From positions 62,001-126,000 of IMG/VR virus record IMGVR_UViG_3300027759_004177: a stretch of 64,000 bases of DNA, one strand, 5' to 3'. How positions within the stretch are numbered: position 1 is the first letter of the stretch; each line of letters begins with the position of its first letter. The position numbers and the translations under genes were made by a program. Positions 3,633-46,480 of the stretch are shown one piece after another. The notes beneath the pieces were generated by a model. That model saw only the letters and a program-made list of their open reading frames with translations. It was not told where the DNA came from and ran no database searches.

Positions 3633-4552
3633 TCAATCTCCAAGTACTGTAGTTTAAACCAGTCTGCACTGGCTTCATGTCCAATATAACCACGTGGGTT
3701 ACATACCACCCTAGTTTCGCCAATCCAGTAGTTGAAGTTATAATGCGTATGACCATGCAACCAATAACGAATCTGTGGGCGAGCTTCAATAAACGCATCC
3801 AGGCTACTACGGAATGCGGCATTCAACAGGTTACCTTTGTATTGTTCCGCCACACTCGACTCACTGGGACAATGATGTCCTACCACAACATAGCTACCCG
3901 GGTCACGAGTCGCATGATCAACATAATCTAACATTTTCCTGTGATCGATAACACTATCTTCCGGAGTCCAACGTGCTGGTTCTTCTTTGCTCTTGTAGCC
4001 TGTACGAATCATGGCACCTTTATTATCAAGTTGATACTGTCCACCATTTAGACCATCACCGGTCCATAGCGGATTCCGTTCGTAAATGGGAACTTGACGA
4101 ACTACCATCCTATTACTGTTTAACACTTCGCGGAAGTCGTTCATGGCACTTTGAGCATAGCTCATAGCCTCTCCATCTTCCTGGTTCATATCAGTCCACA
4201 GGGTGCCACCAACAAAGGTGTGCCCTTGATACCGCCATGTTTCTTTTTCAAGAATGTGTAAGTTGCCGTAGTCTAAATGTTCTCGAAGAATGTTTTCAGT
4301 ATAAGCCACATCACCTGAGTAGTGTTCATGATTGCCCATGATGTAAACTACCTCAGGAAATTCCCGACACACATGATCAAAAAACTGCCTGTACTCTCGG
4401 GCCAGGTGCTGAACGTAGGTGGGATTACGATCAGTAAAGTGTTTGGCCACACAGATGTCGCCGGCCAACACCAATACATCAGCACCTTCTGTGTTGTCTA
4501 ACACAATAGGTCCAAACTCTAAATGTATATCACTGCCTAGTGCTATTTTCAA
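3629..4552 (-). CDS. calcineurin-like metallophosphoesterase
   Basis: SDIH, AGD, GNHE, HH.P, HGHTH motifs. Confidence 0.9.
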   Translation of the reverse strand: MKIALGSDIHLEFGPIVLDNTEGADVLVLAGDICVAKHFTDRNPTYVQHLAREYRQFFDHVCREFPEVVYIMGNHEHYSGDVAYTENILREHLDYGNLHILEKETWRYQGHTFVGGTLWTDMNQEDGEAMSYAQSAMNDFREVLNSNRMVVRQVPIYERNPLWTGDGLNGGQYQLDNKGAMIRTGYKSKEEPARWTPEDSVIDHRKMLDYVDHATRDPGSYVVVGHHCPSESSVAEQYKGNLLNAAFRSSLDAFIEARPQIRYWLHGHTHYNFNYWIGETRVVCNPRGYIGHEASADWFKLQYLEIE

Positions 4553-8908: not shown

Positions 8909-9871
8909 TTATTTCTTCACAATAGATTGCATGGTGTTGAAAACTTTTTGTTGATTTTCCAACAGCATTTCTCTTGTGCCACCAAATGGTGCTGATGCCA
9001 ATGGTCCTAATCTTTTTTGGATTTCTGGATCGCTAAAACCTTTGGCCAACACCAGATATAAATCTCTGACTATGTGGTCAGGTGTTCCGGCTGGTGCCCA
9101 AACTCCAAAAATCGAAGATAACACAAAATTTGGATGATTTTTATTCAACCACACGGCCTTGGTTGCTGGAGGATTGAATTTATTGGCCATGTCTACCCCT
9201 GCTGGGTCAAATGCTCCAATGATTTTTAATTTTCCTGCTTTGACATGTGATTCCGGAACAGAAATGCTGTCAACTGCTATTTTGACATGGCCTCCCAGCA
9301 CATCGGTCAACACTGGACCAGATCCTTTGTAAACTATAAAATTGGGTTCTGGTAGTTTTTCTAGTTCTGCCCATTTTTTGTAGATTGGGGCCATGATGGC
9401 ACTGAATATGCCAATGTCAAACTTTTTGGGGTTTTGTTTTGCCCATGCAACAAATTCTGCATAGTTGTTGAAAGGTGCATCAGCACTGGCATATAAAACC
9501 TGGATACTTGGCACCACTGGAAAAACTGGTACGACACTTTTTGCGGTGTAAGTGGCAGTGGAATCATTTACTAGTCCTGTGTTAAAACTGGCAGTGGCCA
9601 CTACCATGAGATTGTGCCCGTCGGGTTCGGCTTTGGCAAAGTGGTTCATGCCAATCACACCACCAGCACCAGCCATGTTGGTCGTCACTGATTTCCAACC
9701 GTGTTTTTCAAGTATTTCGCTGGTCAGCCGTGCAATAACATCGTTGCTACCGCCCACGGGCCATGGAGTCATGACATCAATGGTTTTGGTAGGTTTGAAA
9801 TTTTGAGCAGATGCTAGGCCGACTGTTAAACCCAGTATCAGAGCGGCAAAGATTTTTGTGATTTTTTTCAT
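8909..9871 (-). CDS. Bug/TctC tripartite tricarboxylate transporter substrate-binding protein
   Basis: signal peptide; PWPVGGSNDVIAR, N.AGAGGVIG, PDGHNL, YKGSGP..TDVLGG, APAGTP. Confidence 0.9.
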   Translation of the reverse strand: MKKITKIFAALILGLTVGLASAQNFKPTKTIDVMTPWPVGGSNDVIARLTSEILEKHGWKSVTTNMAGAGGVIGMNHFAKAEPDGHNLMVVATASFNTGLVNDSTATYTAKSVVPVFPVVPSIQVLYASADAPFNNYAEFVAWAKQNPKKFDIGIFSAIMAPIYKKWAELEKLPEPNFIVYKGSGPVLTDVLGGHVKIAVDSISVPESHVKAGKLKIIGAFDPAGVDMANKFNPPATKAVWLNKNHPNFVLSSIFGVWAPAGTPDHIVRDLYLVLAKGFSDPEIQKRLGPLASAPFGGTREMLLENQQKVFNTMQSIVKK

Positions 9872-10012
9872 AGAAAGATCCTTTGATTTAGAAAATGTGT
9901 AACTAGATATAAGTTTACACTGAGCTAATAAAAAATGCAAGTGGAAAAGCAGAACTTTGGTGAAGTTTCAGCGGAACTTTGCTGTAACTAATTTTATTTA
10001 GCTTTTGGCAAT

Positions 10013-10033
10013 AAAAAAGCCCCCGGAGGGGCT
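10013..10033 (-). terminator. terminator ending tmRNA transcript
   Basis: AGCCCC-tccg-GGGGCTTTTTT on minus strand. Confidence 0.8.
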
Positions 10034-10034
10034 G

Positions 10035-10350
10035 GTGGTTTCTGTTACGAGGTATTTCCTACCCTAGGCGCTGTTAGGCGGCCAATGCGAACTGTTCGTC
10101 GTTTGCGTTTACGTTGTTTGCTTTTTACGAGTACTCCTCTCGTGTTGCCATCTCTTCTAGCTCACCATGTCGAAACTGTTTCATCCCCATCAAAAAGGCT
10201 CTTGACAATCCAGAATAGATAGTTGGCAACAACTGCTATGCCCCAGAGATAAATCCAATGCCAGTCGTTAAACATAAAAGTCCTTTTGGTGGAGATGCTG
10301 GGTTCTGCCCCCAGGTCCACAGCGCCTTCGATTTGAAGGAATTACAACAA
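10035..10350 (-). ncRNA. ssrA: two-piece (circularly permuted) tmRNA; tag (A)ANDEQFALAA
   Basis: acceptor piece ends CUGGG-GGCAGAA-CCCAG-CAUCUCC-ACCA at 10287; coding piece starts GGGGAUG at 10188 (G3:U70 pair); tag frame 10106..10074; outer ends approximate. Confidence 0.92.
10162..10275 (-). CDS. putative 37-aa membrane peptide in the tmRNA intervening segment
   Basis: AAGGA SD; MFNDWHWIYLWGIAVVANYLFWIVKSLFDGDETVSTW. Confidence 0.45.
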   Translation of the reverse strand: MFNDWHWIYLWGIAVVANYLFWIVKSLFDGDETVSTW

Positions 10351-10369
10351 TATCGTTATTATATACTTA

Positions 10370-11167
10370 TTAAGTTTCTGCGTCAACCTTGGGTTTGGTA
10401 CGCCATTTTGCCAATTCGGATTCAAACTTTTGTTCTAGATCTGCGGTGATAACGGCCTGATCAACCTGTTGTCTTAGTTCATTAGCAAACGTTTCCAATT
10501 GGCCAATGTCGCCCATGTACTTGAACGTGTCTGTGACACGTCTAGTATCGTACGCATCCATGATTATGTGATAGCGGTCCTGATTTGAATCATTGCGAAT
10601 TTGATGCCAGACATTTACCCAAACCATGTAGGCCGTACCAGGTTCCATATACAACGTTTCTCCTTCGGCTGTGAAGGTACATGCAGGATTTGTAATCAGG
10701 GGTATGTGGATACGTGCCATATATTGGTTTTCACCACAATCTCTATGCACCAGACTCTTGCTACCAGCCTTCAGACAAGTTACCCTGGCTCGACGTGGTG
10801 TCAACCCAAATGCCTCAATTTGATCGATGGTCCGAGCAATCTCACCGCAATAGCCCTGTGTGGGTTTCTTGTATTCTAACGAATGTGCAATGTTAAAATA
10901 TTTCAAGGTAGTGTAATTGTTGGCATTTTTAGGAAAGAATACTTCTTCGATAGTGGTGCCTTCTTCGTTTTGAAAAAATTCCCAACCGTCTTGCCAGGCA
11001 CCAGTTTGACTCTGCAAACTCCATCCGCCAAATCCTTTATAGGCATCGGTTTCATATTCTTCGCCTTGCACGACTTGATTGCCCAAAGTAAACACATGAT
11101 TTTTTACATCGGCTACTAACCGGTCATGATCGTATTTGATAAAATTTAATTTTTCATAGAATGACAT
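10370..11167 (-). CDS. aspartyl/asparaginyl beta-hydroxylase-like Fe/2OG oxygenase
   Basis: VHRD...RIHIPLITN...WHQIRNDS..DRYHII. Confidence 0.8.
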   Translation of the reverse strand: MSFYEKLNFIKYDHDRLVADVKNHVFTLGNQVVQGEEYETDAYKGFGGWSLQSQTGAWQDGWEFFQNEEGTTIEEVFFPKNANNYTTLKYFNIAHSLEYKKPTQGYCGEIARTIDQIEAFGLTPRRARVTCLKAGSKSLVHRDCGENQYMARIHIPLITNPACTFTAEGETLYMEPGTAYMVWVNVWHQIRNDSNQDRYHIIMDAYDTRRVTDTFKYMGDIGQLETFANELRQQVDQAVITADLEQKFESELAKWRTKPKVDAET

Positions 11168-11176
11168 CGTACATCC

Positions 11177-11776
11177 TTATAGTGTATTTTTAAATGCTTG
11201 AGCAGCACTTTTATCAAATGTGCCCATGTTACTGGTTACGGATATCCTGGCCTGGCTGGAACAATTGGGTTCTACCATGTGTAATACAAACCCTGGAAAG
11301 AATACCAGTTTACCTTCTGCAGGCTGAATGCGACTAAACTTTGTGCCGTTAACGCCATCATTTCCTGAATCCCAGTCGCATCCATTGCGAGGATCTATTA
11401 GCAATAAGTCACCACAGTTTTCAGGAGCCTTAACATAATAGGTCATTGCAATCTTGGGGCTACCATGTCCATGTATGGGCATACCTTGACCAGGTCGGTG
11501 ATAGTTTATCCAGCCACGAGCATGCCAGAATTCAAATTCCTTGACAGTTGGTGCTATGTAATCGTATGTCTGTGCTTTGACTATTTTGATAGTGTAGTTT
11601 TTTAGTTCTTGTACTCGGGGACTATCGCAGTTCCAAATATTAGAGTTGCCAGCGTCGGCTTCAGGATCACAATATTGGCCAATTTCGTCAAGTAGTTCGT
11701 TGTTGAATTGTTCGTCAAAGTCGGTTTGTATTTCCCACACAGGGGTCACCCACATGTCTGTTTTAGTTATTTTCAT
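11177..11776 (-). CDS. putative 2OG-Fe(II) oxygenase (TIGR02466-like)
   Basis: WINYH...HGH...YYV...DPR...EGKLVFFP..LHMV.PN...RISV. Confidence 0.85.
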   Translation of the reverse strand: MKITKTDMWVTPVWEIQTDFDEQFNNELLDEIGQYCDPEADAGNSNIWNCDSPRVQELKNYTIKIVKAQTYDYIAPTVKEFEFWHARGWINYHRPGQGMPIHGHGSPKIAMTYYVKAPENCGDLLLIDPRNGCDWDSGNDGVNGTKFSRIQPAEGKLVFFPGFVLHMVEPNCSSQARISVTSNMGTFDKSAAQAFKNTL

Positions 11777-12471
11777 TTGAATTGAACCAAGTTGAGTCGA
11801 TTTAAAATCTGCAGATAGTAGAATCCCAAATCAAATTCATTTTTATTTACAGCCATGTTACACAGCCTGCTGTCTCTATGGTGATTGTTGTGTAGTTCTT
11901 CACCAACACACAGTATGCCTACAGGAACAACATTACGAGTATAGTCGCCTAGGTCAAAATTTTTGTAACCGATGCTATGACCAAATACTGTTATTGTTGC
12001 GATTGTTAAAAAATTTACCACAAACAAATGTACAATCCATACGAGAATTCCCAACCAACCAAACAACAGCATGTTGATTAACAATAACAATACAACTCCC
12101 AGTCTTGGATGCCGATCAATAACGGTGTCGGTAGATGCTTCCGCACAGTATCTATGATATTCTTGATCAGAAACTGTTATTTTATACGATCGAAAGAAAC
12201 TTGGAACTAGACAGCACCGCAACAAAGACCAAAAACCAAATCTAGGAGTATGAGGATCATTGTATGAATCCGAGAACTCGTGATGCTTTCTATGTTGTAC
12301 CACAAACTCTCGAGTAACCACATCAAACAAGATCCAATACATGATCTTCATTGCGGTTTCTACTCGCGGAGTCAGGTTGTATTGTCTGTGTATCATATAT
12401 CGATGCATGTACAGGGAAGCCAGCACACAGCCCAGGTGTATGGTCACAATGGTATAGATCAACATCAACAT
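11773..12471 (-). CDS. membrane fatty acid desaturase (delta-9 type)
   Basis: His boxes HRYMIH, HRKHH, HNNHH; TM segments. Confidence 0.85.
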   Translation of the reverse strand: MLMLIYTIVTIHLGCVLASLYMHRYMIHRQYNLTPRVETAMKIMYWILFDVVTREFVVQHRKHHEFSDSYNDPHTPRFGFWSLLRCCLVPSFFRSYKITVSDQEYHRYCAEASTDTVIDRHPRLGVVLLLLINMLLFGWLGILVWIVHLFVVNFLTIATITVFGHSIGYKNFDLGDYTRNVVPVGILCVGEELHNNHHRDSRLCNMAVNKNEFDLGFYYLQILNRLNLVQFK

Positions 12472-15486: not shown

Positions 15487-16941
15487 TTATTGAGTATTTA
15501 TGACTGATTCCACCCGACTTTGACCATACACTTCAATTCCTTCGATCTCGCCAACTACTTCACTGACAATTTTGATAGGTATGACTCGTTTCTTTTCAGT
15601 TTCTGTGTGTTCATATATGGTACCAAACACGTCTTGCCGTTCCAAGGGCAACTCGTCCTGTTTGATCAGGGTGGGAATATAACCCGTTATTTTCTCTACA
15701 GCCAGGGCAAACAAGGCCACATTGTCCGAATAGCTGTTGGCACAGCTGACATCCCAGAATTCTTTGTCCAAGAACATGCAGGCACCTTTGCAAAGGTGTA
15801 GTACCGGGCACTTGGGACATTCAGCACGATTTGACCAGTGTGTTGATGTTTTGATAGCCACGTTGTCATAATCGTCTAAATTACCGCCCAAATGGCTTTC
15901 TCCGTTTTTGCCGGTTTCTAGACTGCTGACGTTTTGACAAGTCATCACATTACCACGCAGGTCGATTGCCAACACATGCTCGTCGTCCATGCCGCACTTT
16001 TGTCCTAAGAATTTGGATTCGTCGTGCGCCAGCACGTTTCTAATGAATCCATCGATCTTGTCCAACTGCATCTTGAATCCAATTTGTCCTTGTGTACTAA
16101 AAATATCAGCAAAGGCTGTGCGACGAAATTCAAAATGTTGCTGTTTGGTTTGCAGGCTGTTTTGCATGCCATCAGCATCGTAACTGTCTACAATGCCGCC
16201 TTCGCCCAGAGACACATTGGGGTCTCCTGTGAATTCCACAAACCAGTCATAAATCCGTTTTCTGCTGATGTTTTGTGCATTGAGCATGGGATTAAAGCTA
16301 AAGCCTTTTTTGAGTCTGCTCATCTGACGATAAAATCCCAGGATCTGTTTTTTCTTTTCGGGATCCGCAAACGGATCAGGTCCACGCACATGTTGTCCAG
16401 GACCATCGTGGCTGATTGATACTGTAAAGTTCAATTTCATTAGCCAATCAATTATTTCCTCATTGAGTATGCTGCCATTGGTAATCACACTGAACTGTGG
16501 TTTATGTTTCCAGCCACTAAATTTTTCCAAGATAGCTTCAGCCAAAGGTTTGAGTGTTTTCCAGTAAACAAATGGTTCTCCACCCCAGAACTCAATCTTG
16601 AGGCCTTGGGTTTCATCAAACTCTAGCACTTTGAATTTTTCTAAAAAAACGTCAATGTCTTTCTTTGAAGTTTCTGGAGCACGTTCCACGAACTTCTGTG
16701 AGCAGTAATCGCAAGAGTAATTACAGCTGAGTCCCAACTGTATCTTTAATAGCTGTATCGCACGGCTTTTCTTCAATGGACGATCGCGATCAAAAGCAAC
16801 ATATGGCTTCAAATTGTGTTTGTGTATCTGTGGATATTCAAATACCGTACCATCCTCACTTTTTAAAGTGTTGGTTTCGTTATCGTAATAAAAGATTTTT
16901 TTGTCTGCGGCTGAACGCTCAGCATGAATTTCAAATAGCAT
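15487..16941 (-). CDS. radical SAM/SPASM-domain maturase
   Basis: CNYSCDYC, FWGGEP, ITNG, SISHDG, CG...G.V..C and CPKCPVLHLCKGAC...C SPASM cysteines. Confidence 0.92.
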   Translation of the reverse strand: MLFEIHAERSAADKKIFYYDNETNTLKSEDGTVFEYPQIHKHNLKPYVAFDRDRPLKKSRAIQLLKIQLGLSCNYSCDYCSQKFVERAPETSKKDIDVFLEKFKVLEFDETQGLKIEFWGGEPFVYWKTLKPLAEAILEKFSGWKHKPQFSVITNGSILNEEIIDWLMKLNFTVSISHDGPGQHVRGPDPFADPEKKKQILGFYRQMSRLKKGFSFNPMLNAQNISRKRIYDWFVEFTGDPNVSLGEGGIVDSYDADGMQNSLQTKQQHFEFRRTAFADIFSTQGQIGFKMQLDKIDGFIRNVLAHDESKFLGQKCGMDDEHVLAIDLRGNVMTCQNVSSLETGKNGESHLGGNLDDYDNVAIKTSTHWSNRAECPKCPVLHLCKGACMFLDKEFWDVSCANSYSDNVALFALAVEKITGYIPTLIKQDELPLERQDVFGTIYEHTETEKKRVIPIKIVSEVVGEIEGIEVYGQSRVESVINTQ

Positions 16942-42513: not shown

Positions 42514-44565
42514 TTATTTCTCATGAGCTATGAATTCCCCATTCCAGTTTGCTGGTAGGTCTTGTTGCTTCATAAAGTCGCAACGTTCAATCCATATCTT
42601 ATAGTACTTGTCCATTTGTCCACCAAAGTTGCCTGTTAACTTTTTGCACATGGCGGCCGCTTCATTGAATTTTTTCTGACGGTACAGGTCATGCATTACA
42701 TCGTGTGCTTCCTTGTCTTTGCTGTAATCTTCACCTCGAGTACGTAATACTGTATAGATTAAGTCTGCTACTGTCTTGCCTTTTGGTTGTAAGTTATCCA
42801 ACAGCAAGTAGAAGAAATCATCTTTAGTTCTGTTGTATGTTTCAGCACCGATAATGGCCAACACACCGTAAGCCTTACAACGTGCTTCTAGTCGGGCGGC
42901 TGTACTAACCATGTCACCCAAGATATCATAACTGTGTCGGTCGGTTGAACCCATCTCACCAATGAACCCAACACCTGTGTTACAGCCCCAGCCCATTGCA
43001 GCTGGCGGCAAGCCTTGTGCTTCCATTTCTTTGGTATAAGCATCTACAGCGTCTAACATTTCTAAACCTACTTTGACAATAGTTCTAGCATGATCAGGAT
43101 CGTCTATAGGCGCACCATGAATGTGCATACTTGCATCACCCACATACTTGATAACCATACCCCGGTTGTCCATGATAGGTTTTGAAATAGCATCCATGTA
43201 ACCGTTCATGTATTTGCCTAATCCGCCTACATCATCGCCATAGTGTTCGCCAATTGGTGTAAAGCCACGTAAGTCACTAAACATAACACTTACGTCTTTA
43301 CGCACACCACGTTTGATCAAGTCAGGATCTTTCTGTAACATCTCCACAACTTCTTTTGAACAGTAACCAGCAAACTGTTTCTTTATGGCTTGCTTTTGTA
43401 AGAACTCGCTTACAAACTTAACACCGTAAGCATGAAGGAGAATAACAGTGAGGCCGCCAGCAAGGGCAGTAATGTCAAATAGCCAAGCATTAGCCGTGTA
43501 AACGTACTGAGATACAGGATACAAAATACCAAGAGCGATAACACCAGTAGCAAGTCCAACATATACATACCTCGTTAAAAATAATAATACGATACCTAAA
43601 ACCACAATAGCAATGATCTCAGCACCATCGGCCCAGTCGGGTCTTGATATTGCTGGACGATCTTTGTTGGCAATAACTGTGCCTAATACTGCGGCCTGTA
43701 AATCTTGTGGTAACATTTCGCCCAGGCTTGTGGCTACAGGGTTTGCTAGACCTTGCGCCGACACACCAACAATAACGATTTCACCATCAAAGTCTCGGGG
43801 CAAGTTGGTTAGGCTATAACGCTCTGGTGTCAAGCTCCAGTCAATCCATATACGACTCAAGCTGTCTGTGGTCACAGGACCAAATGCTGGAATTCGCATT
43901 TTCTCAACACCCTGCTCATTGATTTTAACTTGGAAGGTTGAGTCGCCTGCAGCCACACGCATGACTTCCATGGCCAGGCTTGGATACAATCGACCGTTGT
44001 AAGCAACTACCAGTGGCATACGACGCACAACACCGTCAACTTCCGGAAACGTGTTAACAACACCAACTCCGGCAGCGGCCGTTTCTACACTGGGAATGTT
44101 AGCGATAAGCCCCGGATAGGTCACAAACGCATCTAAACCAAATGGTCCAATTACTGCTGATCCTGGAGCTCGTGGTTGATTTCTTGTCGTTGTTGATCCA
44201 ATGCTAGGAAGTACCGTTGGGTATTGTTTTAACGCTTGCACATACGCAGTATCTTGCCCCATACGGTCTTTATCTGGAGTAAGAATATTAAACACAACAA
44301 GACCAGCATTACGTCTGTAAAGGTCTCGAATAATGGCACCGTATGTATCACGGGAAAAAGGAAATTGCCCATATCGTTCTAATGCTTTCTCATCTATGTT
44401 TACTACACTGACCCCGATCGTTTCGGCAGGTCGGCTAGTAACAAGTGTATCGAAATAGCGTAGCCTTACGCTTTCAACAAACATAGGATCTGCAACACGC
44501 AAGCCCACAATGATTGCTAGTGTTAATAGAGCAGTCCAAGGACTGATTAAGATTTTTTTGAACAT
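42514..44565 (-). CDS. CHASE2-domain class III adenylate/guanylate cyclase
   Basis: DGVVRRMPL (CHASE2), 3 TM, FSDLRGFT, KYVGD, GDMVSTAARLE. Confidence 0.93.
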   Translation of the reverse strand: MFKKILISPWTALLTLAIIVGLRVADPMFVESVRLRYFDTLVTSRPAETIGVSVVNIDEKALERYGQFPFSRDTYGAIIRDLYRRNAGLVVFNILTPDKDRMGQDTAYVQALKQYPTVLPSIGSTTTRNQPRAPGSAVIGPFGLDAFVTYPGLIANIPSVETAAAGVGVVNTFPEVDGVVRRMPLVVAYNGRLYPSLAMEVMRVAAGDSTFQVKINEQGVEKMRIPAFGPVTTDSLSRIWIDWSLTPERYSLTNLPRDFDGEIVIVGVSAQGLANPVATSLGEMLPQDLQAAVLGTVIANKDRPAISRPDWADGAEIIAIVVLGIVLLFLTRYVYVGLATGVIALGILYPVSQYVYTANAWLFDITALAGGLTVILLHAYGVKFVSEFLQKQAIKKQFAGYCSKEVVEMLQKDPDLIKRGVRKDVSVMFSDLRGFTPIGEHYGDDVGGLGKYMNGYMDAISKPIMDNRGMVIKYVGDASMHIHGAPIDDPDHARTIVKVGLEMLDAVDAYTKEMEAQGLPPAAMGWGCNTGVGFIGEMGSTDRHSYDILGDMVSTAARLEARCKAYGVLAIIGAETYNRTKDDFFYLLLDNLQPKGKTVADLIYTVLRTRGEDYSKDKEAHDVMHDLYRQKKFNEAAAMCKKLTGNFGGQMDKYYKIWIERCDFMKQQDLPANWNGEFIAHEK

Positions 44566-44575
44566 CAAGTATTTA

Positions 44576-45726: not shown

Positions 45727-46480
45727 TGTCATGTGCCTTTGTCCAAGTTACTATTTCCCACCTACCCGAGTGATGCTCAACCAGAGCAGTCATTGATTCG
45801 ACCCAGTCGCCATCATTCATATACACAATGCCATCTATCATCTTTATTTCTGCGTGATGTATGTGTCCACAGATCACACCATCAAAGCCACGTTTCTTAC
45901 AATATGTAGCTAGATTGGTTTCAAACTGAAACATAAAGTCTGCGGCTTTTTTGACACGGTGTTTGAGATACTTGCTTAAACTCCAGTAGCCAAATCCCAA
46001 CTTGTGTCTGATCCAATTAAATCTGCTGTTCCAATCTAATACCAGGTCGTACAGTTTATCGCCCAGGAAACTCAGCCAAGGGGCCAAACGTGTGATTCCA
46101 TCAAACAGGTCTCCGTGGGTGACCAAATATGTTTTGCCATCCGCCCCAATGTGTTCTGTTTGATTTGTTATTTCAACACGTCCAAATCCCATGCCATAAG
46201 GTATGAGTGGTCTCAGAAACTCGTCGTGGTTGCCGGCCACATAGATCACACGTGTGCCACGTTTGGCGTGTCCTAGGATTCTTCTGATTGCATTGGTGTG
46301 GCTTTGTTTCCATCGCCACTTGTTTTGTTGAATCTTCCAGGCGTCAATGATGTCGCCCACTAGATAAAGTGTTTCACAGGTGTTGTGTTTGAGAAAGTTG
46401 TTGAGTTGTTCGGCTTTGCAATCTCTGGTGCCAAAGTGTATGTCACTAATAAAAATTGAGCGATAAGTTTTGGCTGTCAT
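45689..46480 (-). CDS. LpxH-like metallophosphoesterase (UDP-2,3-diacylglucosamine hydrolase family; PlcP-like)
   Basis: YRSIFISDIH.G, LVGDIID, GNHDEFLR, HGDLFD, CGHIH, N.GDWVES. Confidence 0.88.
   Translation of the reverse strand: MTAKTYRSIFISDIHFGTRDCKAEQLNNFLKHNTCETLYLVGDIIDAWKIQQNKWRWKQSHTNAIRRILGHAKRGTRVIYVAGNHDEFLRPLIPYGMGFGRVEITNQTEHIGADGKTYLVTHGDLFDGITRLAPWLSFLGDKLYDLVLDWNSRFNWIRHKLGFGYWSLSKYLKHRVKKAADFMFQFETNLATYCKKRGFDGVICGHIHHAEIKMIDGIVYMNDGDWVESMTALVEHHSGRWEIVTWTKAHDNVDTDTTGSSHE

What the first reader, a model, noticed from the sequence alone, without database searches (positions are those of the whole stretch)
10035..10350. Phage two-piece permuted tmRNA with a non-canonical T-loop
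Seen: the order is acceptor piece, intervening segment, coding piece, with a G3:U70 pair, T-loop GGCAGAA instead of UUCRANY, and tag ANDEQFALAA. Known: permuted tmRNAs occur in alphaproteobacteria (which have GGCRGWA-type loops), some betaproteobacteria and cyanobacteria. Inference: an alpha-style scaffold with a beta-style tag, possibly resistant to host anti-phage RNases.
Basis: partly seen in the sequence, partly recalled or inferred. Interest (0 to 1): 0.6.

Follow-up and report, generated by a model that had tools for sequence, protein, structure and literature searches.

The report
Mosaic phage two-piece tmRNA with nested ORF
A 357-kb freshwater jumbo phage carries an intact two-piece ribosome-rescue RNA (tmRNA) whose tRNA-like core, with its unusual T-loop, was swapped in as one cassette that also holds a small membrane-peptide gene between the two RNA pieces.

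Summary
ARAGORN and Rfam call a permuted tmRNA: beta_tmRNA 144.5 bits, tmRNA_permuted 133.7, alpha_tmRNA 92.8. It has G3:U70, an encoded CCA, T-loop GGCAGAA and tag ANDEQFALAA, with a near-consensus promoter and a terminator.

Phage two-piece tmRNAs and GGCRGWA T-loops in alpha-type tmRNAs are both already known.

New here:
1. The gene belongs to a large, essentially virus-only family of beta-type permuted tmRNAs. At least 119 viral contigs encode this same tag.
2. T-loop class switches repeatedly in the family (UUC, UGC, GGC). Position 55 always changes together with a D-loop base (U55 with GG, G55 with AG; 10 of 10 independent pairs).
3. The window's gene is a mosaic. Its backbone is 90% identical to a syntenic relative with a canonical loop. 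The contiguous block of T-arm, acceptor strands, intervening segment and D-loop comes from another lineage resembling alpha-type genes.
4. The intervening segment encodes a conserved 37-aa hydrophobic peptide. Relatives hold other genes there, including a full-length DUF2061.

The RNase-resistance idea is untested. This is a new variant of a known kind.

The parts
10358..10386 (-). Sigma-70-type promoter: -35 TTGACG (10386-10381), 17-nt spacer, -10 TATAAT (10363-10358). The likely start is near 10351.
   Evidence: The promoter scan gives 11 of 12 matches. It aligns to the promoter columns of the beta_tmRNA model. It is about 90% conserved in the syntenic relative L239.
10287..10351 (-). Acceptor piece: the 5' strand of the long P2 helix, the T-arm, the 3' acceptor strand and ACCA.
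   Evidence: ARAGORN places the 3' tRNA domain at 10325-10287. P2, T-stem and acceptor pairs covary across 34 family genes.
10298..10314 (-). T-arm: stem 10314-10310 paired with 10302-10298, and the non-canonical T-loop GGCAGAA at 10309-10303.
   Evidence: Bacterial beta-type genes have TTCGAYT or TTCAATT. Alpha-type genes have GGCRGTA, rarely GGCAGAA.
10189..10286 (-). Intervening segment of 98 nt, to be removed from the precursor. Its ends (10286-10275 and 10204-10193) form a stem that extends the acceptor stem and covers the AAGGA motif (10285-10281).
   Evidence: RNAalifold predicts the trailer/leader stem with many compensatory pairs, up to 20 of 34 sequences changed on both sides. The stem appears in both the MFE and the centroid fold of the window's precursor.
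10162..10275 (-). Nested ORF of 37 codons plus stop (peptide begins MFNDWHWIYLWGIAVV), aromatic and hydrophobic. Its ATG lies 11 nt after the CCA. It reads 27 nt past the RNase P site, and its UGA stop (10164-10162) lies inside the coding piece.
   Evidence: It is 81% identical to the L346 peptide (E 6e-23), with 22 identical, 8 synonymous and 7 nonsynonymous codons. Its similarity to the L253 and L301 peptides is specific to the ORF frame. The family-wide excess of such ORFs is 18 observed vs a mean of 1.1 in shuffles.
10012..10188 (-). Coding piece: 5' acceptor strand GGGGAUG (10188-10182), D-loop ...CAGUUUCGAC with A10177 G10176, the 3' strand of P2, a hairpin, the tag frame, a 3' hairpin and the terminator.
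   Evidence: ARAGORN places the 5' tRNA domain at 10188-10162. This piece is 90% identical to the L239 backbone.
10074..10106 (-). Tag reading frame: GCA resume codon to TAA stop, encoding ANDEQFALAA.
   Evidence: The coding sequence is invariant in 34 of 34 aligned family genes. Metatranscriptome contigs lie on 10041-10127.
10012..10033 (-). Intrinsic terminator: a 6-bp GC-rich stem (10033-10018) followed by a U-run.
   Evidence: Terminator scan and the Rfam alignment.

Best explanation
This is a working ssrA gene for a two-piece (circularly permuted) tmRNA, carried by a freshwater T4-like jumbo phage.

Inferred from the known pathway:
- Host RNA polymerase transcribes one precursor from a near-consensus promoter.
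- RNase P cuts before G1 (10188), and 3' trimming stops at the encoded CCA (10287).
- This releases an acceptor piece of about 65 nt and a coding piece of about 175 nt, held together by the acceptor stem and the long P2 helix.
- Host AlaRS charges the RNA through G3:U70.
- Host SmpB and EF-Tu deliver it to stalled ribosomes, since the phage encodes no SmpB.
- Nascent chains are tagged ANDEQFALAA for host proteases.

Shown here:
- The gene sits in a large, essentially virus-only family of beta-type permuted tmRNAs that all share this tag.
- It is a mosaic. The backbone matches a syntenic relative that has a canonical UUCGAUU loop. The contiguous block of T-arm, 3' acceptor strand, intervening segment, 5' acceptor strand and D-loop was replaced by a cassette also found in other viral tmRNAs, which resembles alpha-type tRNA-like domains.
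- In a permuted gene all the interacting parts of the tRNA-like domain are adjacent in the DNA. One exchange therefore moves a matched set. The GGCAGAA loop (G54, G55, G58) arrives with its D-loop partner (AG instead of GG), which should preserve the elbow contact equivalent to G18-Psi55 of tRNA.
- The same cassette carries a 37-codon gene for a small hydrophobic peptide.

That the peptide is translated from the precursor is inferred.
For: Gene identity:
- ARAGORN and three Rfam models call it.
- Promoter and terminator flank it.
- It is the only tmRNA in a complete 357-kb phage genome, which has 11 tRNAs and no SmpB.

Family:
- At least 119 viral contigs encode the same tag, and every tmRNA that ARAGORN called on these loci (97 of 128 loci gave a call) is permuted.
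- Among 185,579 species-representative bacterial genomes the same tag is encoded 41 times. Forty are standard one-piece genes. The single permuted one lies on a 23-kb tRNA-rich contig in a MAG.
- In the tree the window nests in a viral clade of 76 unique sequences, next to the bacterial beta types.

Fold under selection:
- 35 of 54 predicted pairs show compensatory change, and G3:U70 is kept in 34 of 34 sequences.

Loop compensation:
- G55 goes with D-loop AG in 80 of 84 unique domains, and U55 with GG in 53 of 54.
- 10 of 10 independent pairs on supported branches agree, p about 0.002.
- The 54:58 pair is U:A (65) or G:G (23), with no mixed cases.

Mosaic:
- L239 flanking proteins are 76-92% identical and in the same order.
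- The alignment shows sharp block replacement.
- Backbone is nearest L239 (90%) and L253 (86%), whose cassettes are only 63-65% identical to the window's.
- Cassette is nearest L089 (94%), L346 and L350 (92%) and the bacterial alpha-type L365 (90%), whose backbones are only 55-69% identical.

ORF:
- DUF2061 is found full length at E about 1e-20 in the same slot in L243 and L259.

Presence in nature:
- The locus occurs in freshwater and lake metagenomes of at least 5 studies.
- Contigs from four metatranscriptome libraries lie on the tag region.
Against: - There is no direct evidence of processing, charging or tagging. The RNA data are assembled contigs, which cannot show ends or strand, and most of them come from relatives.
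- The host and its SmpB are unknown, so compatibility of a G54/G55 loop with that host is unproven.
- The cassette is only about 50 nt outside the intervening segment, so its resemblance to alpha-type genes could be convergence. Its D-loop keeps the beta-like UUUCGAC.
- The AAGGA motif is also part of a covarying stem, so on its own it does not show a ribosome-binding site.
- The window's peptide has no Pfam, PHROG or Atlas relative.
- The MFE of the precursor is not better than shuffles (z = -0.64).
Confidence: 0.72

Rival explanations
1. The non-canonical T-loop is an adaptation that lets the phage tmRNA escape a host enzyme that recognises the canonical T-loop, either a tRNA/tmRNA-directed nuclease or the TrmA/TruB modification enzymes. 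Frequent loop switching would then reflect an arms race.
For: - Loop class changes at least 17 times on a tree of 88 sequences, between very close relatives.
- Sampled bacterial beta-type genes and the 40 one-piece genes with the same tag keep TTCRAYY.
- G54 and G55 cannot receive m5U or pseudouridine (my own knowledge).
- T-loop-cleaving toxins exist, for example a Burkholderia CdiA-CT reported to cut between positions 54 and 55 (my own knowledge, not checked here).
Against: - No nuclease or host is identified.
- The switches are explained without selection by exchange of a pre-matched cassette.
- Alpha-type bacteria use the same loop constitutively.
- Canonical loops remain the most common in the phage family: 41 of 88 tree sequences.
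Confidence: 0.12
2. There was no import. The GGCAGAA loop and the AG D-loop arose in place by stepwise point mutation, for example UUC to UGC to GGC, converging on the alpha-type solution.
For: - UGC loops with AG D-loops are common in the family and look like intermediates: 24 of 88.
- The window keeps the family's UUUCGAC D-loop.
- L343 has the window's acceptor stem with a canonical loop.
Against: - Compared with the syntenic L239, both acceptor strands, the T-stem, the T-loop, the D-loop and the whole intervening ORF differ at once, with sharp borders inside otherwise 90-95% identical sequence.
- The same block, including an 81% identical peptide gene, is present in L346 on a different backbone with a different tag.
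Confidence: 0.15
3. The gene is a decaying copy or a decoy. Its tRNA-like domain would only soak up host SmpB, as proposed for the TLD-only gene of mycobacteriophage DS6A, and it would not tag proteins.
For: - The phage has no SmpB.
- The T-loop departs from the beta consensus, and the gene scores about 20 bits below its canonical relatives (144.5 vs 159-168 bits).
- The DS6A precedent is described in PMC4131195.
Against: - The tag frame, resume codon, stop, hairpins, promoter and terminator are intact, and the tag codons are invariant across the family.
- The loop change is compensated.
- The gene is 100% identical over 237 aligned columns (T- and D-loop columns masked) in a second strain, L127, whose surrounding DNA is 98.4% identical.
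Confidence: 0.04

Closest known systems
Betaproteobacterial two-piece tmRNA (Rfam RF01850; the 'third lineage' of Sharkady and Williams 2004, cited from PMC9004378)
   Same: It is the best-scoring model, at 144.5 bits. Shared features: permuted order, long P2 helix, UUUCGAC D-loop, a tag of the ANDExFAxAA type, and promoter and terminator layout.
   Different: - Bacterial members score 169-296 bits and have TTCGAYT or TTCAATT loops with 25-43 nt intervening segments lacking ORFs.
- The window has GGCAGAA with AG, a 98-nt intervening segment holding an ORF, and sits in a viral clade.
Alphaproteobacterial two-piece tmRNA (Rfam RF01849; shown to function in Caulobacter by Keiler et al. 2000, cited from PMC9004378)
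   Same: The T-loop is of the GGCRGWA type and the D-loop starts with AG. One bacterial alpha gene (L365) shares the acceptor stem and the 5' 13-mer GGGGAUGAAACAG.
   Different: The alpha model scores lower, at 92.8 bits. Alpha tags begin ANDN, alpha D-loops read AGGAUCGAC, and the backbone is only about 55% identical.
ssrA of Methylophilales phage Melnitz and other aquatic phages (Buchholz et al. 2022, PMC9004378)
   Same: It is a phage-encoded two-piece tmRNA in a T4-like aquatic myophage. The two phages share a 684-aa protein at 45% identity. Melnitz also has a GGCAGTA loop and an unannotated SD+ATG ORF in its intervening segment.
   Different: Melnitz is alpha-type (106.7 bits), has the tag ANDNYVPVDYALAA, is followed by a glutamine riboswitch, and is marine with a 141-kb genome. 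That paper does not mention loop/D-loop co-variation, cassette exchange or nested ORFs.
tmRNA genes interrupted by group I introns that carry homing-endonuclease genes (tmRNA_intron, PMC11915505)
   Same: In both, a protein-coding gene is nested inside a tmRNA gene, within sequence that is removed from the mature RNA.
   Different: There the insert is a self-splicing intron in the T-loop of a one-piece gene, and the protein serves the intron's mobility. Here the ORF lies in the segment excised by tRNA-processing enzymes and encodes small membrane-type peptides.
One-piece tmRNAs of mycobacteriophages, Bacillus phage G and huge phages (PMC4131195, PMC7162821)
   Same: These are also phage-borne ribosome-rescue RNAs, common in large phage genomes.
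   Different: They are standard one-piece genes. Some huge phages also bring SmpB, which this one does not.

Membership tests
tmRNA, permuted (two-piece) form | Covariance-model score above the curated threshold | tested here: met
   RF04321 scores 133.7 bits (threshold 47) and RF01850 scores 144.5 bits (threshold 84).
tmRNA, permuted (two-piece) form | tRNA-Ala-like domain: 7-bp acceptor stem with G3:U70, discriminator A, 3' CCA, and a T-arm with a 5-bp stem and 7-nt loop | tested here: met
   ARAGORN structure and sequence. G3:U70 is kept in 34 of 34 family genes.
tmRNA, permuted (two-piece) form | Gene order of acceptor piece, intervening segment, then coding piece | tested here: met
   The 3' tRNA domain (10325-10287) precedes the 5' tRNA domain (10188-10162) on the transcribed strand.
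tmRNA, permuted (two-piece) form | Tag reading frame with an alanine resume codon, a hydrophobic ALAA end and a stop codon | tested here: met
   The frame runs from GCA to TAA at 10106-10074 and encodes ANDEQFALAA.
tmRNA, permuted (two-piece) form | The precursor is processed into two RNAs that stay base-paired | not testable with these tools
   Only assembled contigs from RNA libraries were available, and they cannot show ends.
tmRNA, permuted (two-piece) form | An SmpB partner is available | tested here: inconclusive
   No SmpB (PF01668) was found in the phage genome. The host is unknown, but nearly all bacteria have SmpB.
beta_tmRNA subtype (RF01850) | Best-scoring permuted subtype, with the beta-type backbone (P2 helix, UUUCGAC D-loop, ANDExFAxAA tag) | tested here: met
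   Beta scores 144.5 and alpha 92.8 bits. The tree places it beside the bacterial beta types.
beta_tmRNA subtype (RF01850) | Canonical UUCRAYY T-loop with a GG D-loop | tested here: not met
   The window has GGCAGAA with AG. Three of three bacterial beta genes have TTCGAYT or TTCAATT with GG.
alpha_tmRNA subtype (RF01849) | GGCRGWA T-loop with an AG D-loop | tested here: met
   The window has GGCAGAA with AG. Eleven of 12 sampled bacterial alpha genes have GGCRGTA or GGCAGAA.
alpha_tmRNA subtype (RF01849) | Alpha backbone and ANDN-type tag | tested here: not met
   The tag is ANDEQFALAA. The backbone is 55% identical to the nearest alpha gene but 90% identical to the family member L239.

The most novel reading that the evidence does not exclude
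Phage permuted tmRNA genes double as expression sites for small membrane peptides, and for the window's peptide family the link is functional.

- All six homologues found lie inside a tmRNA precursor. Five are in the intervening segment. One (L389) is in the 5' leader, with its stop codon in the first bases of the acceptor piece.
- In each case the start region is covered by the processing stem, or the stop codon lies within mature tmRNA sequence.
- RNase P and 3' processing would therefore cut the ORF from its stop codon. That would create a non-stop message whose product the same tmRNA then tags for destruction.
- Peptide output would thus report the balance between precursor processing and trans-translation capacity in the infected cell.
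Probability: 0.12. Interest if true: 0.85.

Novelty: new variant of a known kind. Interest (0 to 1): 0.55.

Why it matters
**Natural test of the tmRNA elbow.** Positions 55 and 54:58 of the T-loop switch many times between discrete states, always together with a D-loop base. This points to a tRNA-like G18-Psi55-type contact that can be rebuilt as A-G. It also shows that the alpha-type loop is an interchangeable solution, not a lineage quirk.

**A consequence of gene permutation.** Permutation places all interacting parts of the tRNA-like domain side by side in the DNA, so they can be exchanged as one pre-matched cassette. This explains chimeric genes that confuse alpha/beta subtyping, and it warns against using phage ssrA trees to infer host history.

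**Overlooked genes.** The excised segment repeatedly holds real protein genes: DUF2061 and a conserved 37-aa peptide, found in 29 of 144 viral genes and 0 of 15 bacterial ones. Annotation pipelines that mask tmRNA loci would miss these small phage proteins, and they raise the possibility of coupling between RNA processing and translation.

Tried and rejected
- blastn of the gene against 50,697 INPHARED phage records found nothing, so relatives had to be found by patterns.
- Two primary papers on two-piece tmRNA (PMC516066, PMC16621) are not held. A text search for GGCRGUA found nothing, so the alpha-loop claim was tested directly on genomes instead.
- ARAGORN gave no call on many pattern hits. 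Rfam showed that several are permuted tmRNAs with short or long intervening segments.
- My first ORF control shuffled the whole intervening segment. That was unfair, because it destroyed a motif conserved for the processing stem. I repeated it with the stem ends fixed, and the excess remained.
- An ungapped codon comparison of the window with L253 and L301 was misleading because of an indel. I replaced it with frame-specific alignment scores.
- The window's peptide has no Pfam or PHROG family and no Atlas hit above 0.77. It was too short for the search for related loci.
- The motif scan returned 14 chance hits unrelated to the peptide.
- A wrongly guessed coordinate pair failed and was corrected.
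- The host was not identified. The tag matches one-piece tmRNAs of Rhodocyclaceae, Limnobacter and Pasteurellaceae, which is only a hint.
- The MFE z-score of the precursor is not significant.
- RNA-library contigs cannot show processing sites or expression level.
- I considered and rejected the idea that the locus is bacterial or a prophage fragment. The record is a complete viral genome with virion genes.

Full report
**What is there**

ARAGORN finds a single permuted tmRNA in the window, on the minus strand, with tag ANDEQFALAA. Rfam gives beta_tmRNA 144.5 bits (E 3e-44) over 10400..10012 and tmRNA_permuted 133.7 bits. The alpha_tmRNA model scores 92.8 bits at the same place.

Read on the minus strand, the gene has these parts:
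- -35 TTGACG (10386-10381), a 17-nt spacer and -10 TATAAT (10363-10358).
- An acceptor piece from about 10351 to the encoded CCA at 10287.
- A 98-nt intervening segment (10286-10189).
- A coding piece starting at G1 (10188), with the tag frame at 10106-10074.
- A GC-rich terminator hairpin (10033-10018) followed by a U-run.

The acceptor stem is GGGGAUG paired with CAUCUCC, giving G3:U70. The T-stem is CUGGG paired with CCCAG, and the T-loop is GGCAGAA. Only the strand was left unsaid.

**Where it sits**

The window is bases 62001-126000 of a 356,865-bp IMG/VR virus record rated 100% complete. The genome has 11 tRNAs elsewhere, this one tmRNA and no SmpB.

The window holds virion structural proteins and a DNA ligase. 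One structural protein is about 45% identical to those of T4-like cyanophages. A 684-aa cyclase-domain protein is 45% identical to that of Methylophilales phage Melnitz.

The tmRNA is flanked by auxiliary genes: a TctC-family binding protein downstream, and an Asp/Asn hydroxylase-like protein, a 2OG-Fe(II) oxygenase and a fatty-acid desaturase upstream. The locus occurs in freshwater and lake metagenomes from at least five studies.

**What was already known**

- Phage-encoded two-piece tmRNAs are documented. Buchholz et al. 2022 counted 53 among INPHARED phages, mostly aquatic, and described the one in Melnitz (PMC9004378).
- Huge phages often carry tmRNAs (PMC7162821).
- The 2025 tmRNA database lists 79 phage sequences and 11,946 permuted ones (PMC11915505).
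- The GGCRGWA loop of alpha-type genes is confirmed here. Of 12 bacterial alpha-type genes sampled, ten have GGCRGTA, one has GGCAGAA and one has TGCGATT. All 11 whose D-loop could be read begin it with AG.

So neither "phage two-piece tmRNA" nor "GGCAGAA loop" is new in itself.

**A large viral family**

Every tmRNA that ARAGORN called on these loci is permuted (97 of 128 loci gave a call).

In one genome per bacterial species (185,579), the same pattern occurs 41 times. Forty of these are standard one-piece genes of Rhodocyclaceae, Limnobacter, Pasteurellaceae and a few unclassified proteobacterial MAGs. The only permuted one lies on a 23-kb contig with several tRNAs, binned into a Bacteroidota MAG, and is probably a phage contig.

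Among 151 genomes sampled from the GTDB order that holds the former Betaproteobacteria, only three have a true beta-type two-piece gene. These score 169-296 bits, have TTCGAYT or TTCAATT loops and carry the tags ANDEHFAIAA, ANDERFALAA and ANDENFALAA.

In a tree built with the T-loop and D-loop columns masked, the window's gene nests in a clade of 76 unique viral sequences next to these bacterial genes. Alpha-like viral genes served as the outgroup.

RNAalifold on 34 family genes finds 54 pairs, 35 of them with compensatory changes. G3:U70 and the tag codons are invariant. The family is therefore under selection for a working tmRNA.

**The T-loop in context**

Within the same-tag family the loop is strikingly variable:

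| T-loop | Count |
|---|---|
| TTCGACT | 25 |
| TGCGAAT | 23 |
| TTCGATT | 13 |
| GGCAGTG | 10 |
| TGCAAAT | 4 |
| GGCAGAA (the window and L127) | 2 |
| GGCAGTA | 1 |

L127 is a strain of the same phage, 98.4% identical over 4.2 kb.

Loop class changes at least 17 times on the tree, and well-supported branches force at least five origins of GGC loops.

The change is never isolated:
- With U at loop position 55, the D-loop reads GG before (N)NUCGAC in 53 of 54 unique domains.
- With G55, it reads AG in 80 of 84.
- On phylogenetically independent, well-supported pairs the two sites move together 10 times out of 10 (p about 0.002).
- Positions 54 and 58 are U and A (65) or G and G (23), never mixed.

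By analogy with tRNA (established knowledge of the G18-Psi55 and T54-A58 contacts), this is a compensated exchange of the elbow contact. The window has G55 with A10177, so its odd loop is matched.

**Mosaic origin**

L239 is a close, syntenic relative. Four upstream proteins are 76-92% identical and in the same order. Its tmRNA has a TTCGATT loop, a GG D-loop and acceptor GGGCCCG.

The alignment shows the promoter, the 5' strand of P2, most of the coding piece, the tag and the terminator at roughly 90-95% identity. One contiguous block is wholly different: T-arm, 3' acceptor strand, intervening segment, 5' acceptor strand and D-loop.

Ranking all collected genes separately for the two parts gives incongruent neighbours:

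| Part of the gene | Nearest genes (identity) | Identity of their other part |
|---|---|---|
| Backbone | L239 90%, L253 86%, L279 and L343 83% (all canonical loops) | Cassette 63-65% (L343 82%) |
| Cassette | L089 94%, L346 and L350 92%, L347 and bacterial alpha-type L365 90% | Backbone 55-69% |

Rfam labels the cassette relatives inconsistently: L346 as beta at 101 bits, and L347 and L350 as alpha at 72-74 bits. The backbone relatives score 159-168 bits as beta.

The simplest reading is exchange of the tRNA-like core as one cassette. The permuted gene order makes this possible, because the interacting parts are adjacent in the DNA. The core resembles alpha-type domains and the rest is of the beta/phage type. 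Convergence cannot be excluded for so short a block, and the D-loop keeps UUUCGAC.

**A gene inside the intervening segment**

Eleven bases after the CCA, and five bases after an AAGGA, an ATG (10275) opens a 37-codon frame for an aromatic, hydrophobic peptide. The frame runs 27 nt past G1 to a UGA at 10164-10162.

Evidence that such ORFs are real:
- In the family, 18 of 72 unique intervening segments have an SD-like word, an ATG 5-22 nt after the CCA and an ORF of at least 18 codons.
- Among the 66 of these segments that are at least 50 nt long, the count is still 18. With the stem-forming ends held fixed and only the interior shuffled, the mean is 1.09 and the maximum 4.
- In L243 and L259 the ORF in this slot is a full-length DUF2061 membrane protein (E 3.5e-20 and 3.7e-21).
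- The window's peptide is 81% identical to that of L346 (E 6e-23), with 8 synonymous and 7 nonsynonymous codon differences.
- It is similar to the L253 and L301 peptides only in the ORF frame: scores 70 and 50, against at most 40 in other frames and about 17 for shuffles.
- A motif scan found further homologues in L392 (same slot) and in L389. In L389 the gene lies between the promoter and the acceptor piece of another permuted tmRNA, and its stop codon falls in the first bases of that piece. All six homologues found are thus inside tmRNA precursors.
- Such ORFs also occur in 11 of 72 other, mostly alpha-like, viral genes. These include Melnitz, whose GenBank record annotates only the tmRNA. 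None occurs in the 15 bacterial two-piece genes sampled.

One caution applies. The trailer after the CCA (10286-10275) pairs with the leader before G1 (10204-10193) in a stem that covaries strongly across the family and covers the AAGGA. The motif may therefore serve processing as well as, or instead of, ribosome binding.

**RNA evidence**

Contigs from four freshwater metatranscriptome libraries lie on 10041-10127, the tag frame and the 3' hairpin. Most diverge outside that stretch and so come from family relatives.

In one library, near-identical contigs also lie on the neighbouring TctC gene, so this phage or a close strain is present there.

Short contigs also carry the GGCAGAA T-arm (10287-10319). 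Contigs cannot show ends, strand or level, so processing remains untested.

**Verdict**

The finding is real and is correctly identified as a phage two-piece tmRNA with an alpha-like T-loop and a beta-like tag. The proposed meaning, escape from host RNases, has no support here. The evidence favours a compensated alternative elbow that arrived by cassette exchange.

The kind of element is known. The variant features are new as far as the searched literature shows:
- a virus-only family with a fixed tag;
- recurrent, co-varying loop and D-loop switching;
- a mosaic tRNA-like core;
- protein genes nested in the excised segment.

Noticed in passing
window 8909-9940 (-), 10370-12471 (-): The tmRNA is flanked by host-like auxiliary genes. 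Downstream is a TctC/Bug-family periplasmic binding protein. Upstream are an Asp/Asn beta-hydroxylase-like cupin, a 2OG-Fe(II) oxygenase and a fatty-acid desaturase. The upstream trio is syntenic in L239, but TctC is not found there.
   Followed up: partly
L243:3295-3501 (-) and L259:6984-7190 (+): Two family members, one from a 320-kb phage contig, carry a full-length DUF2061 membrane-protein gene between the two tmRNA pieces, in a 220-nt intervening segment.
   Followed up: yes
L389, around 4415-4530 (- strand of the locus): A homologue of the window's peptide lies in the 5' leader of another permuted tmRNA (tag AANDSRFALAA, loop GGCAGTA). Its TAA stop falls inside the conserved UUGUUGUAAUCC start of the acceptor piece.
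   Followed up: partly
L352:1584-1745 (+) = Methylophilales phage Melnitz MZ577097.1, inside tmRNA 45984-46436: Melnitz's published two-piece tmRNA also has an SD+ATG ORF of 54 codons in its intervening segment, conserved in L068. GenBank annotates only the tmRNA. A glutamine riboswitch follows the gene.
   Followed up: partly
L151 (= L191), contig NZ_JBBAKG010000090.1: A 23-kb contig binned into a Haliscomenobacter (Bacteroidota) MAG carries a family tmRNA (loop TGCGAAT, same tag) and several tRNAs. The MAG's largest contig (C1) also has a separate, sub-threshold match to the beta_tmRNA model (70 bits; ARAGORN makes no call there). The contig is probably a mis-binned phage fragment.
   Followed up: partly
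G000 genome 183719-201987 (outside the window): There is a cluster of 11 tRNA genes on the minus strand. One of them ARAGORN reads with a two-base anticodon, 'tRNA-??? (ac)', at 195463-195538.
   Followed up: no
G156 (331,654-bp phage) 218519-219064; L231: This jumbo phage encodes the ANDEQFALAA pattern but gives only two weak partial hits to tmRNA_permuted (38 and 27 bits), and ARAGORN makes no call. The gene may be split by a long insert or may be damaged.
   Followed up: no
window 42514-44568 (-) and 15487-16941 (-): The window holds a 684-aa adenylate/guanylate-cyclase-domain protein shared with Melnitz (45%) and Pelagibacter phage HTVC008M (36%), and a 484-aa radical SAM protein.
   Followed up: no
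L134:9847-10036 and L141:4954-5147: Some viral permuted tmRNAs with the GGCAGAA loop have almost no intervening segment. G1 begins 2-4 nt after the CCA, so two-piece maturation would need only one or two cuts.
   Followed up: no
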